Part shown: piece by piece, positions 5,548 through 10,424 of the stretch | Position numbering within the stretch: position 1 is the stretch's first letter | Layout of the letters: every line of letters starts with the position of its first letter | Origin: Pocillopora damicornis | Taxonomy: Eukaryota | Direction: 5' to 3' | Assembly (NCBI RefSeq): GCF_003704095.1 | Contig: NW_020844645.1 | Coordinates: 186,001 to 250,000 of the forward strand | Length of the DNA stretch: 64,000 bases | Notes under the pieces: generated by a model | The model's database searches: none | What the model saw: only the letters and a program-made list of their open reading frames with translations | Told to the model about the DNA's origin: nothing | Made by a program: the position numbers and the translations under genes

Positions 5548-6031
5548 ATCTATTCAATCTCCACCTTCCTCCTCTTGAAAGCCACACGAAAAATTAGCGT
5601 CGTCACATTTTCCGCTTTATAAAGACATCTTACATAACAATATCAGCTGTGAACCTTGTTATTTTGAGGCCAATTTTTTTAATATACAGCTGTGCACACA
5701 AGATCAAGATGAAAAAAAAAGAAAATAAACTATATTTCAGGAAAATGACAAAGCTGTTGTACTAAAAAAGTCGTCTTTGTGCCAACCTATGAATTTTAGC
5801 TGGAAATTTGTGCTCTAGTTGCGTGACTTCGTGACAGGGGCGAACTTGTTCCAACTCTCCTCGGTAAGAGATCGTCCCCAGAATGCTCCGGCCTCGGAGA
5901 GCTACATGAACACCGCACCCTGTTGGAAGAAGTGAAGGAAGTTGGATTGTTTGACGGAAATTTAAGATCGCGTGATTTCTTCAGCCTGGCAAGAAGTGAT
6001 TGTACTTTCGCCTCAGCAATGAGTAGTCGCC
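5548..6031. promoter_or_regulatory. Putative bidirectional promoter between BLVRA and the NLR
   Basis: Divergent start codons at 5547(-) and 6032(+), 484 nt apart. Confidence 0.45.
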
Positions 6032-9000
6032 ATGGAAGTCGTGAAGGAGTATTTACTCGCAAAATACTTCAGTCCTTTTGGATATATTGTGGCAGTTTTC
6101 CATCTTTTAGCATTGACAGCACTTACCACAGCCGCTGGAGTCTTAAGAACGAGCGAGCGTCGAAGATTCAGCTGTCCTTCTTCTCCTGATTCTAAAGACG
6201 ACTGTCTAAGGCAATATGACAAACTGGTCTACTCTGGTTTGCCATTCTATGGATTTGTTCTGTTTTGTTTTGCGTCCGTTTTGACAGTGTGTATCGCCTA
6301 CTCCTGGTGTTTTGTGAAATCGCGAGTCGATGAGATTGAAATCGCCTTGAAACCAAATCCAGAAAGCCCTCGCCGTCGGCCTAGAGTGAAAACCCGCCGA
6401 GTGTTCTGGTCTTATTTTGTTCATCTTATTTTGCGATTTTTTGGGGGGATTGTGTTCATTATTTTGCAGAACTCTGTGTTTTATTTAAGTGGATTTCCAG
6501 CAGAATTTGTCTGTTTTACTCAAACAGTGAAGGGGGCAGCAAATTCCACAAATGTTAGTACGACCAAAGAAAATTCCTTAGCCATCAACTGTGATAACTC
6601 CATTGCATCTGACAATGCTGTCTACGCGAGAGGAATTTGGATAGTGAACATTCTATTTACGTTGCTTGTGTTTGGAGAGATATGCTATCTTTCGTTGCGA
6701 GCAATACAGAGAAAACAGTTCATCTTCGATTCCGAATTCTGTGAGAGGCACTTTTTTAGCAAGGGTAGGAACCCTATTGCGCTGAGCGAGTTGACATTCC
6801 GGACGAGACAACGAATACGCGAAGAAACAGAGATCCTTGAACCTTTAATTGCTCAGCCAGAAATAGAGAGAGTCAGACTTTTGGATGACGCTTTTGTCGA
6901 TCTTGTTATTTACAGTGGAAGAGCATGTAGCGAATTCGCTGACTTGTTGAAAAGACACGAAATATATGATATATATTTAAAGCCCCAGTATGGATCAATA
7001 GCCATAAAGAAAGTTGATGAGCTTTTTCTTCCAAATGAAGATACTCGAGATCCCCGCAAAATTCTCGTGGTTGGTCGCCCCGGCATCGGAAAGTCTCTGC
7101 TTTGCACGAAACTGTCGCGTGACTGGAGCAAGAGTGATCTTTTGCGTGACAGTGACAAAATCTTTCAACATCTGTTTGTGTTCCAATTCAGATGGTTCAA
7201 TACCGAGACAATAGAGAAGATATCTCTCAAACAGTTGTTGAGTCGTTTGTATTCAGAAGGTAGCATGGACAGTGAAGTCTTACAGCATATTTTAGACAAC
7301 CCTGAGCGAGTGCTATTTGTTTTTGATGGCTTGGATGAATTTAAATACCACGAACGCATTCTGGAGGATGAAAGGGCACATGCTGGAAACAGTGCAACAG
7401 AAGAAATGCCATTTTCAGCTCTTTACGTGAAGCTGATGAAAGGAAAGCAGCTTTCTGGGGCCACGATTTTGACCACGTGTAGACCAAATGTTGTGCAGAG
7501 TGTTGCACATTTGCCATTTGACAGGAAGGTTGAGATTATGGGATTTACTCCAGAGAAAGTCCACAAATATGTACTTAAATTTTGTGCACATGATCCAGAG
7601 ACAGTGAACAGAATATGGGGTCATATCAGCAGCAATTTAGAACTGCTCTCTTTGTGCTACATTCCTGTCAACAGTTTTATTATCTGTTCCCTTTTAGAAA
7701 AGTTGATCAAACTTCAACAACATTTAGGAAATACTCTACCAGCAACTTCAACTGACATTTATGAAGGAGCTCTGAGGCTGTTCATTTTCAAGCATCACCC
7801 AGAATTTAAGAGGAAGTTTTTAACAAAGGATTATCTTCTTGGAAATGTGGGCCTCCCTGATCAAGTTGAAGAAACTTTGAACCGGGTTGGATCATTGGCA
7901 AAAACAGGAATTCAGGAGAGACGACTGATGTTTGACTCAGTGGAGGTGAAGGGAATAGAAGACTGTGGGTTGTTCAATCGTATGCCAGATTGTGAAGTTT
8001 TACCTTTCAAATTGAAGTCCCAATTCTGCTTCATTCATTTGACTCTTCAGGAATTTCTTGCTGCCAAAGAAATAGTGAAGATGGATTCCAAGGACATTAG
8101 TAATTTCATCCTCACAAATGCTTCAGATCCAAAGTGGCACTTGGTACTTCAGTTTGTGGCTGGCCTTCTGCGTGGACAAACAAATGAGGCAGTCAGCAAT
8201 TTTGTAAACCTCCTTTGTGACTCTTTAACATACATAACTCTTTGTGACTCTTTAACATTTAGTAGTAAATCCAAACAAGAAGCTGTTCTTATGATGAAAT
8301 GTTTGCATGAGTACAATGATGCTACAATTGTGGAAAAGGCAGCATCACTTCTACAGAAAAATGAAACTTTCAACAATAAGATAGATTTATCTTATTCTGA
8401 AATAACACCTGTTGACTGTGCAGCAATTGTTTTCTTTATTAACAAACTACACAACCTTATGGAGTTGAACCTGTCCTCTAACAATATATCAGACCAAGGT
8501 GTTTCATTCCTGTGCAGTGTAGTTAGAGATGGACACTGTAATCTCACCACACTACACCTTGGTTTCAATGACATACAGGACCAAGGTGTTTCACAACTCA
8601 GTGAAGCTTTAAGGGATGCTAACTGTAAACTAACTAAGCTGAGGCTTCCTGGTAACTACATAACATACCAAGGTGCATCACATCTGCAGGATGCACTTAA
8701 AAATGCAAATTGTAAACTCACCAAGTTGGACCTTGGTGGCAATAGTATGGGGGATATAGGTGTTTCACGGCTGAGTGAAGCACTCAAAGATGTAAATTGC
8801 AAACTTGAAAAGTTAAACCTAGATGAAACTGATATTACAGACCAGGGTGTTTTCCATTTGTGTGAAGCAATTAAAAATGTAAATTGTAAACTGACCAAGT
8901 TAGACATTAGTGGAAACATGATATCTTTCCATGGTGCATTAAGCATGTCTGTTGCACTTAAAGATGTGAACTGTAAACTTACAAAAATGAATCTTGAAGT

Positions 9001-10030
9001 AAATGACATCGGTAACTTGGGTGTATTTCACTTAAGTGATGCACTTAAAGATGAAAACTGTAAATTTACACGGTTAGATCTTACTGGTGTTAAGATGGGA
9101 GATGAAGGTTTAGCACATCTGTGTGATGCTCTGATAAATGAAAATTGTTTAGTTACTGATTTGAACCTAAGTCACAATGCAATAACAGGGCAAGGTGTTT
9201 CCTACCTGCAAACTGCGCTCAGAAATAAGAATTGTAAGCTTTTGCAGTTGAACCTAGCTATGAATACACTAAGGAACACTTCATATTTAATTAGGAAACT
9301 TACTGAATCACTGATCAAGGGGGATTCATTGAATTTTTATGGTGAACAAAGTGTTCTGTTCCCAATGTCTAGCGCACTCAGAGATGAAAATTGTAAACTA
9401 GTGAAGCTTGATCTGATATCAACTGGTGTGGAAGATGGTGACTTATTCTACTTGTGTGGTGCACTGAAAGACATGAATTGTAAACTCACTGTGTTGTACC
9501 TTGGTGGCCATCTCATAACAGATGAAGGTTTGCAACACCTGTGCAGTGCACTTGAAGATGTAAATTGTAAACTCACTGAGTTGTTACTCATGAGTCGCAA
9601 TATAACAGATCAAGGTGTTCCCCTTTTTTTTACTGCAATTAAACATAAAAATTGTAAACTCACCAAGTTGAAAATTGAGTTTCCAGAGGTAACAGATGAA
9701 GGTTTTTTACACCTTTTGGTTGCTCTTAAAGATGTAAATTGTAAACTCATCAAGTTGAAAATTCAGTTTCCAGAGGTAACAGATGAAGGTTTTTTACACC
9801 TTTTGGTTGCTCTTAAAGATGTAAATTTTAAACTCACTAAGTTGTCACTAGAGGGAAATGAGTTAATGGATCAGTTCATACCACATCTGTGCTCTGCACT
9901 TGAAGACCCAAACTGTAAACTCATTAACTTAGACCTTACACAAAACAAATTTACAAAGCAAGGTAAAAACATGCTACATCAAGCACTAAAAAGTGCGAAT
10001 AGAACAAGTCATATCAAAGTCGAAGTATAG
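6032..10030 (+). CDS. Intronless NLR: N-terminal 4-TM connexin-like domain, NACHT NTPase, ~18 ribonuclease-inhibitor-type LRRs (1332 aa)
   Basis: gccATGG start; four hydrophobic segments in aa ~15-222; Walker A GRPGIGKS (7073-7096); Walker B LFVFDGLDE; LTTCRP; CYIP; winged-helix FIHLTLQEFLAA; 29-aa LxLxxNxIxDxGxxxLxxAL..NCKL repeats. Confidence 0.95.
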   Translation: MEVVKEYLLAKYFSPFGYIVAVFHLLALTALTTAAGVLRTSERRRFSCPSSPDSKDDCLRQYDKLVYSGLPFYGFVLFCFASVLTVCIAYSWCFVKSRVDEIEIALKPNPESPRRRPRVKTRRVFWSYFVHLILRFFGGIVFIILQNSVFYLSGFPAEFVCFTQTVKGAANSTNVSTTKENSLAINCDNSIASDNAVYARGIWIVNILFTLLVFGEICYLSLRAIQRKQFIFDSEFCERHFFSKGRNPIALSELTFRTRQRIREETEILEPLIAQPEIERVRLLDDAFVDLVIYSGRACSEFADLLKRHEIYDIYLKPQYGSIAIKKVDELFLPNEDTRDPRKILVVGRPGIGKSLLCTKLSRDWSKSDLLRDSDKIFQHLFVFQFRWFNTETIEKISLKQLLSRLYSEGSMDSEVLQHILDNPERVLFVFDGLDEFKYHERILEDERAHAGNSATEEMPFSALYVKLMKGKQLSGATILTTCRPNVVQSVAHLPFDRKVEIMGFTPEKVHKYVLKFCAHDPETVNRIWGHISSNLELLSLCYIPVNSFIICSLLEKLIKLQQHLGNTLPATSTDIYEGALRLFIFKHHPEFKRKFLTKDYLLGNVGLPDQVEETLNRVGSLAKTGIQERRLMFDSVEVKGIEDCGLFNRMPDCEVLPFKLKSQFCFIHLTLQEFLAAKEIVKMDSKDISNFILTNASDPKWHLVLQFVAGLLRGQTNEAVSNFVNLLCDSLTYITLCDSLTFSSKSKQEAVLMMKCLHEYNDATIVEKAASLLQKNETFNNKIDLSYSEITPVDCAAIVFFINKLHNLMELNLSSNNISDQGVSFLCSVVRDGHCNLTTLHLGFNDIQDQGVSQLSEALRDANCKLTKLRLPGNYITYQGASHLQDALKNANCKLTKLDLGGNSMGDIGVSRLSEALKDVNCKLEKLNLDETDITDQGVFHLCEAIKNVNCKLTKLDISGNMISFHGALSMSVALKDVNCKLTKMNLEVNDIGNLGVFHLSDALKDENCKFTRLDLTGVKMGDEGLAHLCDALINENCLVTDLNLSHNAITGQGVSYLQTALRNKNCKLLQLNLAMNTLRNTSYLIRKLTESLIKGDSLNFYGEQSVLFPMSSALRDENCKLVKLDLISTGVEDGDLFYLCGALKDMNCKLTVLYLGGHLITDEGLQHLCSALEDVNCKLTELLLMSRNITDQGVPLFFTAIKHKNCKLTKLKIEFPEVTDEGFLHLLVALKDVNCKLIKLKIQFPEVTDEGFLHLLVALKDVNFKLTKLSLEGNELMDQFIPHLCSALEDPNCKLINLDLTQNKFTKQGKNMLHQALKSANRTSHIKVEV
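9650..9845 (+). repeat. Near-identical 87-nt (one LRR unit) tandem duplication within the NLR
   Basis: caagttgaaaattgagtttccagagg.. at 9664 recurs at 9751; KLKIEFPEVTDEGFLHLLVALKDVN / KLKIQFPEVTDEGFLHLLVALKDVN. Confidence 0.9.
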
Positions 10031-10424
10031 CACGTAAAAGAGAAAGCAATTTGAAATTACCATGATTGAGGTGCAGCTCTGTGTCAAGAGCTTAGCAAAC
10101 CAGTCAGTGCAACACTAAGACCAGATTTCATAAGCATATAATGAGGTTTCATGGTGTTATATTGGTAGTTCTTATCTTAATATACTGTACAGGTGTTCAT
10201 GTACACTTGTCATGAGATTGTATGACACAGAATGTAATTATGTAATTATTCTGTTTGTCATAACTTTTAAAATTATAGTCAACAAAGATTGGTTTACTGA
10301 TTATAATAAAGTGACATGTAGAACATGTATTTCTTAGTGATGTCTGTGCTGTTGGTGTTGTGTAAAGTCAATCAGGTATCAGCAGTGGCTGCTACCATAG
10401 GGGAAGCTTATGTGTCCTTCAATT

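What the first reader, a model, noticed from the sequence alone, without database searches (positions are those of the whole stretch)
6155..6610. Cysteine pattern and glycosylated loop-2 insert predict a non-docking hemichannel
Seen: loop 1 has C48 and C58, loop 2 has C161 and C187. The 25 aa between C161 and C187 (FTQTVKGAANSTNVSTTKENSLAIN) hold two N-glycosylation sequons (N171-S-T, N174-V-S). Established: typical connexins have 3+3 Cys paired C1-C3', C2-C2', C3-C1', and extracellular glycans block docking in pannexins. Inference: the mutually bonded middle pair has been lost from both loops. That covariation supports real homology, and the docking segment is replaced by a glycosylated insert, so the protein would act as a single-membrane pore rather than a gap junction.
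Basis: partly seen in the sequence, partly recalled or inferred. Interest (0 to 1): 0.75.

Follow-up and report, generated by a model that had tools for sequence, protein, structure and literature searches.

The report
Coral connexin-like channel loops with sugar sites
These are the two outward-facing loops of a connexin-like channel domain fused to an immune receptor gene in a Pocillopora coral; a 2026 preprint already showed that coral proteins of this family form single-membrane pores, so only the conserved sugar-attachment sites on loop 2 add something.

Summary
They lie in a 1332-aa single-exon gene, window 6032-10030 (+), with a four-helix N-terminal domain, a NACHT domain and LRRs.

- **Conservation:** each of the four Cys is kept in 108-110 of 110 homologues under 80% identity. 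103 of 110 have a sequon between the loop-2 Cys, 11-fold denser than in the rest of the domain.
- **Connexin homology:** a family profile hits only connexins in the PDB at E<=0.001, best Cx31.3 at 4e-11. The alignment puts the four Cys on connexin C1, C3, C1' and C3', so the middle pair is missing.
- **Already in print:** bioRxiv 10.64898/2026.06.13.731801 describes anthozoan connexin-like NLRs with two Cys per loop. 3 of 3 tested formed hemichannels, not gap junctions.
- **Against the reasoning:** Cx23 has the same Cys pattern yet forms gap junctions. This genome's copy of the non-docking pmCxL30 has no loop sequon.

The scan noted the same pattern on another piece of this genome (s1-777655).

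Verdict: a new member of a known kind. The hemichannel reading is probable; the glycan-block mechanism is unproven.

The parts
6032..10030 (+). Single-exon gene for a 1332-aa connexin-like (CxL) NACHT-LRR protein; the end coordinate includes the stop codon
   Evidence: The ORF has no internal stop. Pfam finds NACHT at E 2.6e-26 and LRR_6 at E 3.8e-35. PolyA RNA-seq contigs are colinear with it: X1 over 5768-8321 and X4 over 5904-9707, with no joint at the CxL/NACHT boundary. A 99% identical protein is named from Pocillopora verrucosa.
6032..6751 (+). Connexin-like four-helix channel domain (aa 1-240)
   Evidence: AF2 model with pLDDT 92 and pTM 0.84. The family profile against the PDB gives 25 of 25 hits at E<=0.001 as connexins, best 6l3t Cx31.3 at 4.1e-11. 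Every Foldseek PDB row listed (ranks 1-50) is a connexin. This protein alone reaches Pfam Connexin only at E 0.087; 19 of 33 aligned members reach E<=0.01.
6146..6235 (+). Outward loop 1 (E1, aa 39-68) with C48 (6173-6175) and C58 (6203-6205)
   Evidence: Searches give the positions. C48 is kept in 108 of 110 and C58 in 110 of 110. They align to connexin C1 and C3.
6473..6631 (+). Outward loop 2 (E2, aa 148-200) with C161 (6512-6514) and C187 (6590-6592)
   Evidence: C161 is kept in 110 of 110 and C187 in 109 of 110. They align to connexin C1' and C3'. The model has strands at 158-164 and 182-189.
6515..6589 (+). 25-aa segment between the loop-2 Cys; residues 165-181 form the hairpin tip, about 15 aa longer than in connexins
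   Evidence: The spacing is most often 25 and ranges 5-36 across 110 homologues. Cx31.3 and Cx36 take gaps of 3+12 here. The tip has lower confidence, with block means of 78 and 64. It is no more variable than other segments.
6542..6559 (+). Two predicted N-glycosylation sequons, N171-S-T and N174-V-S, at the hairpin tip
   Evidence: Searches give the positions. The N171 sequon is kept in 53 of 53 sequences at 90% identity or more and in 63 of 69 at 50-90%. The second is kept in 51 of 53. 132 of the family's 177 sequon Asn lie in the third and fourth fifths of the insert.
7058..7591 (+). NACHT NTPase domain (aa 343-520), with a Walker A match starting at aa 348
   Evidence: Pfam PF05729 at E 2.6e-26; the G-x4-G-K-S match is at 348.
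8447..9991 (+). Ribonuclease-inhibitor-type leucine-rich repeats (about aa 806-1320; limits approximate)
   Evidence: Pfam LRR_6 has 6 stretches, the best at 806-828, and LRR_4 matches 924-963. The far limit is judged by eye from the repeated motif in the translation.
10305..10310 (+). AATAAA polyadenylation signal
   Evidence: Read. The RNA contigs end at 10315 (X1) and 10325 (X4).

Best explanation
Positions 6155-6610 encode the two outward loops of a connexin-like (CxL) channel domain. That domain is the N-terminus of a membrane-embedded NACHT-LRR immune receptor of a Pocillopora coral.

Shown here:
- The domain is a connexin relative by profile and fold.
- Its four loop Cys are family-invariant and fall on connexin positions C1, C3, C1' and C3'.
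- The loop-2 hairpin tip is about 15 aa longer than in connexins.
- The tip carries positionally conserved N-glycosylation sequons.
- The gene is intact, is held by polyA RNA libraries, and has no intron between channel and NACHT.

Inferred by homology: two inter-loop disulfides, C48-C187 and C58-C161, staple E1 to the E2 hairpin, as C1-C3' and C3-C1' do in Cx46. N171, and probably N174, are glycosylated in the ER.

Inferred from experiments on relatives: subunits assemble into a hexameric or heptameric large pore in the plasma membrane. [quoted passage not shown] The NACHT-LRR hangs in the cytosol.

The enlarged hairpin tip is the likelier cause of non-docking. The glycans probably add to it, and may also serve folding or trafficking, but they are not required in the family.
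For: - Profile of 33 family members against the PDB: 25 of 25 distinct sequences at E<=0.001 are connexins and 34 of 39 at E<=1. None is an innexin, pannexin, LRRC8 or CALHM.
- Residue alignments to Cx31.3 and Cx36 give the Cys correspondence.
- Pfam Connexin matches 19 of 33 members at E<=0.01; no member matches an innexin or pannexin family.
- AF2 model with pLDDT 92. Foldseek ranks 1-50 are all connexins. VIA-align gives connexins Z 13.0-15.5.
- Cys are conserved in 108-110 of 110.
- Sequons: 103 of 110 have one or more, 177 observed against 77 expected, and 3.73 against 0.33 per 100 aa.
- The N171 sequon is kept in 53 of 53 close and 63 of 69 middle-distance relatives.
- Cx46 disulfides are C54-C192, C61-C186 and C65-C181 (PMC9266770, Methods passage).
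- A monophyletic clade of 6 (support 0.99), nested five nodes deep among 2+2 sequences under midpoint rooting, gained one Cys in each loop together. The loop-1 Cys sits three residues before C58, as connexin C2 sits before C3. This fits inter-loop pairing at that spot.
- Preprint 10.64898/2026.06.13.731801 (Results and Discussion read): anthozoan CxL-NLRs are single-exon with two Cys per loop. pmCxL30, edCxL50 and plCxL60 reach the plasma membrane of HeLa cells and show no plaques and no dye transfer. The anthozoan CxLs assayed for release let ATP out (glutamate too where measured) on depolarisation or raised CO2, including edCxL50 and pmCxL62, which carry NACHT domains.
- Expression: RNA contigs from 4 runs in 3 studies, ending 10-20 nt after AATAAA.
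Against: - This protein itself has not been expressed or assayed. It shares only 25% identity with the tested pmCxL30.
- This protein alone misses Pfam's Connexin threshold (13 bits against 31.3).
- Fold alone does not separate connexins from LRRC8A (Z 14.7), pannexins (Z 11.5-13.3) or INX-6 (Z 11.0).
- Disulfide geometry was not measured, because the tools return no coordinates.
- Glycosylation is predicted from sequons only.
- Glycans cannot be the general cause of non-docking. The pmCxL30 copy in this genome has no sequon in E1 or E2, and 7 of 110 homologues have none between the loop-2 Cys.
- The read-laying tool warns that contigs in an RNA library do not by themselves prove transcription.
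- A search listing (PMC9171361) reports cell-cell channels made by glycosylated pannexin 1, so a glycan block need not be absolute.
Confidence: 0.7

Rival explanations
1. The glycans on the loop-2 tip are the specific cause of non-docking, as in pannexins. Removing N171 and N174 would let the channel form gap junctions.
For: Sequons are conserved and concentrated at the hairpin tip: 103 of 110 have one, and 132 of 177 Asn lie in the central fifths. They exceed composition-matched shuffles. The pannexin precedent is in PMC8769644.
Against: The pmCxL30 copy in this genome has no loop sequon, and pmCxL30 did not couple HeLa cells (preprint). The preprint attributes non-docking to larger, more elaborate loops. 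The connexin segment between C1' and C3' is expanded by about 15 aa regardless of glycans.
Confidence: 0.2
2. The four-helix domain is mainly a membrane anchor and oligomerisation platform that places the NLR at a membrane. It may sit on an internal membrane such as a phagosome or symbiosome, with the loops facing the lumen. Conduction would not be its function.
For: NLRs signal by oligomerising, and a hexameric or heptameric membrane domain would pre-arrange them (inference). Luminal loops would carry disulfides and glycans just as extracellular ones do. The location of this protein was not tested here.
Against: NACHT-bearing relatives edCxL50 and pmCxL62 released ATP, and edCxL50 also glutamate, when expressed in HeLa cells. 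Plasma-membrane localisation is stated for pmCxL30 and dpCxL52 (preprint). The channel-type fold is kept at high confidence.
Confidence: 0.12
3. It docks after all and forms gap junctions, homotypic or heterotypic, between coral cells.
For: The same 2+2 Cys pattern is compatible with docking in Cx23. Protostome CxLs ofCxL40 and laCxL27 formed gap junctions (preprint).
Against: 3 of 3 anthozoan CxLs tested showed no plaques and no dye transfer. The tip is extended and carries conserved sequons.
Confidence: 0.05
4. The domain belongs to the innexin/pannexin/LRRC8 lineage rather than to connexins. It has 2+2 Cys, a glycosylated loop, and a fusion to LRRs as in LRRC8.
For: VIA-align scores LRRC8A:C at Z 14.7 and pannexins at 11.5-13.3, close to the connexins. 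2+2 Cys is the innexin pattern (preprint).
Against: No innexin, pannexin or LRRC8 chain is among the 39 PDB sequences at E<=1 with the family profile, while 34 are connexins. 0 of 33 members match an innexin or pannexin Pfam family at E<=0.01, while 19 match Connexin. Identity in the structural alignments is 14-23% to connexins and 7-14% to the others. The preprint reports the same result by HHpred and clustering.
Confidence: 0.03

Closest known systems
Anthozoan connexin-like NLRs (CxL-NLRs), Butler et al., bioRxiv 10.64898/2026.06.13.731801 (June 2026)
   Same: The N-terminal connexin-like domain is followed by NACHT and LRRs in a single coding exon, with two Cys in each outward loop and enlarged outward loops. 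The family has many copies in coral genomes. This genome has 23 profile matches, 11 of them full-length without stops.
   Different: This gene was not among the proteins named in the text I could read; Table 1 is an image and the supplements are closed. The main text does not mention glycosylation or disulfides (0 occurrences). The conserved loop-2 sequons and the assignment of which Cys pair is missing therefore go beyond the main text.
pmCxL30 of Pocillopora meandrina (tested hemichannel). Its copy in this genome is at G000:C2122, L001 346-1119 (-)
   Same: It belongs to the same family and has 2+2 loop Cys (C51, C71, C178, C196). The L001 ORF matches what the preprint says of pmCxL30: the N-terminal nine residues, K140, R232 and about 30 kDa.
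   Different: It is only 25% identical to the window's domain. It has no NACHT-LRR, a 17-aa segment between the loop-2 Cys instead of 25, and no sequon in either loop.
Vertebrate connexin Cx23 (GJE1, epsilon clade)
   Same: It has four outward Cys because the second Cys of each loop is absent (PMC4729916). That is the same pair missing here.
   Different: Cx23 is reported to form gap junction channels as well as hemichannels. Nothing I read reports a loop-2 extension or glycan for it, and I did not examine a Cx23 sequence.
Human Cx31.3 / GJC3 (PDB 6l3t)
   Same: It is the best sequence-profile match (E 4.1e-11) and the first Foldseek match. It was solved as a hemichannel, per the entry title.
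   Different: It has the full 3+3 Cys, a short loop-2 hairpin and no fused cytosolic NTPase (alignment).
Pannexins
   Same: They are four-helix large-pore channels with 2+2 Cys, and their outward-loop N-glycans hinder docking (PMC8769644). The fold is similar at Z 11.5-13.3.
   Different: No sequence-profile relationship was detected here. This would be a convergent solution, not shared ancestry.

Membership tests
Connexin superfamily (connexin-like domain) | Four transmembrane helices with N- and C-termini on the same (cytosolic) side and two outward loops | tested here: met
   There are four hydrophobic segments and a K/R-rich middle loop. The AF2 model has four long helices plus a loop-2 hairpin. 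Sequons are confined to loop 2 within the domain.
Connexin superfamily (connexin-like domain) | Significant sequence similarity to connexins | tested here: met
   The family profile gives E 4.1e-11 to Cx31.3, and 25 of 25 PDB hits at E<=0.001 are connexins. 19 of 33 members hit Pfam PF00029 at E<=0.01, best 7e-8. The window protein alone reaches only E 0.087 and 13 bits, below the 31.3-bit cut-off.
Connexin superfamily (connexin-like domain) | Connexin fold | tested here: met
   Foldseek ranks 1-50 are all connexins, with TM-scores normalised by target of 0.58-0.74. VIA-align gives Z 13.0-15.5. LRRC8A and pannexins score nearly as high, so the fold alone is not specific.
Connexin superfamily (connexin-like domain) | Three Cys in each outward loop (C-x6-C-x3-C and C-x4-C-x5-C in the connexins aligned) | tested here: not met
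   The pattern is 2+2 here and in 100 of 110 homologues. The missing ones are C2 and C2'. Cx23 lacks the same pair, so this feature is not universal within the family.
Connexin superfamily (connexin-like domain) | Inter-loop disulfides C1-C3' and C3-C1' | not testable with these tools
   The model's coordinates are not returned. The pairing is inferred from the alignment and the Cx46 pairs.
Connexin superfamily (connexin-like domain) | Hexameric large pore and head-to-head docking into gap junctions | not testable with these tools
   No multimer modelling or assay was available. The preprint reports pores but no docking for 3 of 3 anthozoan relatives.
Anthozoan CxL-NLR (Butler et al. 2026) | An N-terminal CxL domain followed by NACHT and LRRs in one coding exon, with two Cys per loop, in an anthozoan | tested here: met
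   RNA contigs show no joint across the CxL/NACHT boundary. The organism is Pocillopora.
NLR (NACHT-LRR) | A NACHT NTPase with a Walker A motif plus C-terminal leucine-rich repeats | tested here: met
   PF05729 at E 2.6e-26, LRR_6 at E 3.8e-35 and a weak NLRC4_HD2 match. The Walker A match starts at aa 348.
Innexin / pannexin / LRRC8 | Sequence similarity to innexin or pannexin profiles | tested here: not met
   None appears among 39 PDB sequences at E<=1. 0 of 33 members match at E<=0.01 in Pfam.
Innexin / pannexin / LRRC8 | 2+2 loop Cys and (in pannexins) an N-glycan on an outward loop | tested here: inconclusive
   The pattern is present, but Cx23 shares it. The glycan is only predicted.

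The most novel reading that the evidence does not exclude
The conserved glycosylated hairpin tip may be more than a docking block. It could be an outward-facing sensing surface of a transmembrane NLR. Binding of microbial lectins or glycosidases to the glycan crown would change the channel ring and, through TM4, the packing of the cytosolic NACHT-LRR. A connexin-family pore would then double as an outside-in immune receptor. Nothing here excludes this, but the tip shows no excess variability, which speaks against a diversifying recognition surface.
Probability: 0.06. Interest if true: 0.75.

Novelty: new member of a known kind. Interest (0 to 1): 0.3.

Why it matters
Connexins were long held to be a chordate invention and are not known as glycoproteins (recalled, not tested here). 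The June 2026 preprint already moved their origin back to the cnidarian-bilaterian ancestor. It also showed that coral members act as hemichannels fused to immune receptors.

This window adds three things:
- It pins down which disulfide pair is missing. It is the same pair as in Cx23.
- N-glycosylation sequons at the tip of the docking hairpin are a conserved trait of most of the family.
- At least one experimentally non-docking member lacks the sequons, so glycans cannot be the whole explanation.

That turns 'why do coral connexin-like channels not dock' into a clean mutagenesis question.

Tried and rejected
- **Contrast with gap-junction-forming protostome CxLs (ofCxL40, laCxL27):** I wanted to see whether they have short, sequon-free loop 2. 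The preprint's Table 1 is an image and the supplements are closed. A word-indexed search with the family profile gave 29 proteins, the only named one from a coral. Two cluster look-ups returned coral names or none. I dropped this.
- **Identifying the tested edCxL50, plCxL60 or pmCxL62 among my hits by size and Pfam:** no caspase domain and no names were found. L002 (G000:C3136) holds a CxL-NACHT frame of about the right size for pmCxL62, but a masked run interrupts it. I make no claim about it.
- **Loop-2 tip as a hypervariable recognition surface:** variability there is like that of the other segments, 0.026 among close and 0.301 among middle-distance relatives. Rejected as unsupported.
- **Apparent co-loss of C48 and C187 in P0262, and loss of C48 in P0173, as natural covariation:** both have a Cys one to three residues away, so these are alignment shifts. 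Not used as evidence.
- **Extra Cys in loop 2 of 25 sequences without a loop-1 partner:** most sit at the start of TM4, outside the hairpin. Not part of the loop pattern.
- **One RNA contig of run X8 skipping 7638-8412:** it has AG..TG ends and only 21 letters on one side. I treated it as an assembly artefact or a paralogue, not an intron.
Full report
**What is there**

Window 6032-10030 (+) is one open frame of 1332 codons with no internal stop.
- Pfam finds a NACHT domain at residues 343-520 (E 2.6e-26) and ribonuclease-inhibitor-type LRRs (LRR_6, E 3.8e-35). A Walker A match starts at residue 348.
- The first 240 residues hold four hydrophobic segments: 16-38, 69-95, 124-147 and 201-224.
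- The finding's coordinates, 6155-6610, are residues 42-193. That covers the two loops on the side of the membrane opposite the K/R-rich middle loop (10 K+R in 96-123) and the NACHT-LRR.
They are the only sequons in residues 1-240.

**Organism and expression**

- A 99% identical protein is named from Pocillopora verrucosa, where NCBI calls it 'NLRP12'. Relatives come from Stylophora, Oculina and Desmophyllum.
- The window's assembly has 234,350,878 bases in 4393 contigs.
- PolyA RNA-seq contigs from 4 runs in 3 studies lie colinear on the gene. Examples are X1 over 5768-8321 with no differences and X4 over 5904-9707. None has a joint between the channel domain and the NACHT domain.
- The contigs stop at 10315 and 10325, just after an AATAAA at 10305-10310. 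That fits a polyadenylated single-exon mRNA. The tool cautions that contigs in an RNA library are not proof of transcription.

**Is the pattern more than chance?**

I aligned the domains of 208 homologues with the query and kept 110 rows under 80% identity.
- The four Cys are kept in 108, 110, 110 and 109 of 110. The few exceptions have a Cys one to three residues away and look like alignment shifts.
- With tight loop windows, 100 of 110 are strictly 2+2.
- Between the two loop-2 Cys, 103 of 110 have at least one sequon and 68 have two or more.
- The total of 177 compares with a mean of 77 (sd 7, maximum 100) in 2000 shuffles of each insert. The excess is therefore not explained by N/S/T-rich composition.
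- Sequon density is 3.73 per 100 aa in loop 2 against 0.33 elsewhere in the domain.
- 132 of the 177 sequon Asn sit in the central two fifths of the insert.
- The N171 sequon is kept in 53 of 53 sequences at 90% identity or more, and in 63 of 69 at 50-90%.
- This asymmetry supports the topology in which loop 2 faces the ER lumen and then the outside.

**Is it a connexin relative, and which Cys are missing?**

- The window protein alone barely touches Pfam Connexin (E 0.087, 13 bits against a 31.3-bit cut-off).
- A profile of 33 family members (A1) finds only connexins in the PDB at E<=0.001: 25 of 25 distinct sequences, best Cx31.3/GJC3 at 4.1e-11. At E<=1, 34 of 39 are connexins and none is an innexin, pannexin, LRRC8 or CALHM.
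- 19 of the 33 members reach Pfam Connexin at E<=0.01.
- The AF2 model is confident (pLDDT 92, pTM 0.84). Its Foldseek matches at ranks 1-50 are all connexins.
- An all-against-all structural search gives connexins Z 13.0-15.5. It also gives LRRC8A:C 14.7, pannexins 11.5-13.3 and INX-6 11.0. The fold alone does not decide; the sequence profile does.
- In the printed alignments to Cx31.3 and Cx36, C48 and C58 fall on connexin C1 and C3. C161 and C187 fall on C1' and C3'.
- Connexin C2 faces a non-Cys position, and C2' falls in the stretch where the connexins take gaps of 3+12 residues.
- The middle pair is therefore the one missing, and loop 2 is about 15 residues longer than in connexins (25 against 10 between the outer Cys).
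- Since Cx46 pairs C54-C192, C61-C186 and C65-C181 (PMC9266770, Methods passage), homology predicts C48-C187 and C58-C161. I could not measure these distances because no coordinates are returned.

**A natural experiment**

- Six sequences form a clade (support 0.99) nested five nodes deep among 2+2 sequences under midpoint rooting. They carry 3+3 Cys.
- Their extra loop-1 Cys sits three residues before C58, exactly as connexin C2 sits before C3. Their extra loop-2 Cys sits three residues after C161.
- Both loops gained a Cys together. That fits a third inter-loop bond at the connexin middle position.
- It is one evolutionary event, so it is suggestive only.

**What is already in print**

bioRxiv 10.64898/2026.06.13.731801 (Butler et al., June 2026) covers the family. 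I read the abstract, Introduction, Results and Discussion. It reports:
- connexin-like domains at the N-terminus of anthozoan NLRs, in 4-100 copies per coral genome, mostly as single-exon genes;
- 6L3U as the top HHpred hit;
- plasma-membrane channels that release ATP and glutamate;

The words glycos-, disulfide and disulphide do not occur in its main text. A search for connexin + NACHT + cnidarian found only this paper.

- The Cys pattern does not predict non-docking. Cx23 lacks the second Cys of each loop and is reported to form gap junction channels and hemichannels (PMC4729916, passage citing Iovine 2008).
- Glycans are not required for non-docking. At G000:C2122 this genome encodes a 257-aa, 29.8-kDa protein. 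It has the N-terminal nine residues, K140 and R232 that the preprint gives for pmCxL30. It has 2+2 loop Cys but no sequon in either loop.
- The established premise that pannexin glycans hinder docking stands (PMC8769644, passage). One listing reports cell-cell channels from endogenous pannexin 1 (PMC9171361, listing only).

**Most likely mechanism**

- The domain assembles into an undocked large pore.
- Two disulfides staple E1 to the E2 hairpin.
- The extended tip (165-181, lower model confidence) carries one or two N-glycans and projects where connexins dock.
- The NACHT-LRR sits in the cytosol.
- I put 0.7 on this, 0.2 on the strict version in which the glycans alone block docking, and less on an anchor-only role, on docking after all, or on innexin/pannexin ancestry.

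**Verdict**

The conclusion is probably right, but its Cys argument is wrong and its glycan argument is unproven.
- This is a new member of a known kind. The family in this genome has 23 profile matches, 11 of them full-length without stops.
- The scan noted the same pattern on another piece of this genome (s1-777655). I saw that note only after reaching my own reading.

Noticed in passing
Related proteins P0083, P0091, P0092, P0099, P0101, P0114 (loop 1 and loop 2): A monophyletic clade of six coral homologues has 3+3 loop Cys. Each loop gained one Cys, and the loop-1 Cys sits at the connexin C2 spacing from C58. The clade is nested among 2+2 sequences, so this looks like a re-gain of the middle pair.
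   Followed up: partly
L001 346-1119 (-), that is G000:C2122:355800-357300: A stand-alone 257-aa connexin-like gene matches the preprint's description of pmCxL30 (N-terminal nine residues, K140, R232, 29.8 kDa). It has 2+2 loop Cys, 17 aa between the loop-2 Cys and no loop sequon. Its only sequon, N215-G-T, lies in TM4.
   Followed up: yes
L002 333-1946 (-), that is G000:C3136:303800-306100: This is another connexin-like + NACHT frame with one loop-2 sequon. A masked run interrupts it and reads X in translation. I left it untouched.
   Followed up: no
window 5600-5716: RNA contigs here are far deeper than over the gene (458-630 against about 54 in run X1) and are separate records. A different, highly expressed transcript probably ends just upstream of the gene.
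   Followed up: no
window 7638-8412: One contig of run X8 skips 773 bases with AG..TG ends and only 21 letters on one side. No other run shows it. It is probably an assembly artefact or a paralogue.
   Followed up: no
Alignment to PDB 6l3t: The best PDB relative, Cx31.3, was solved as a hemichannel. It has an N-L-S triplet directly after its third loop-2 Cys. Many coral homologues have a sequon two residues after C187, but this protein does not (N189-S-I).
   Followed up: no
window 11832-15037: Another first-stage note on this window proposes a selenoprotein MsrA with a SECIS element. I did not examine it.
   Followed up: no
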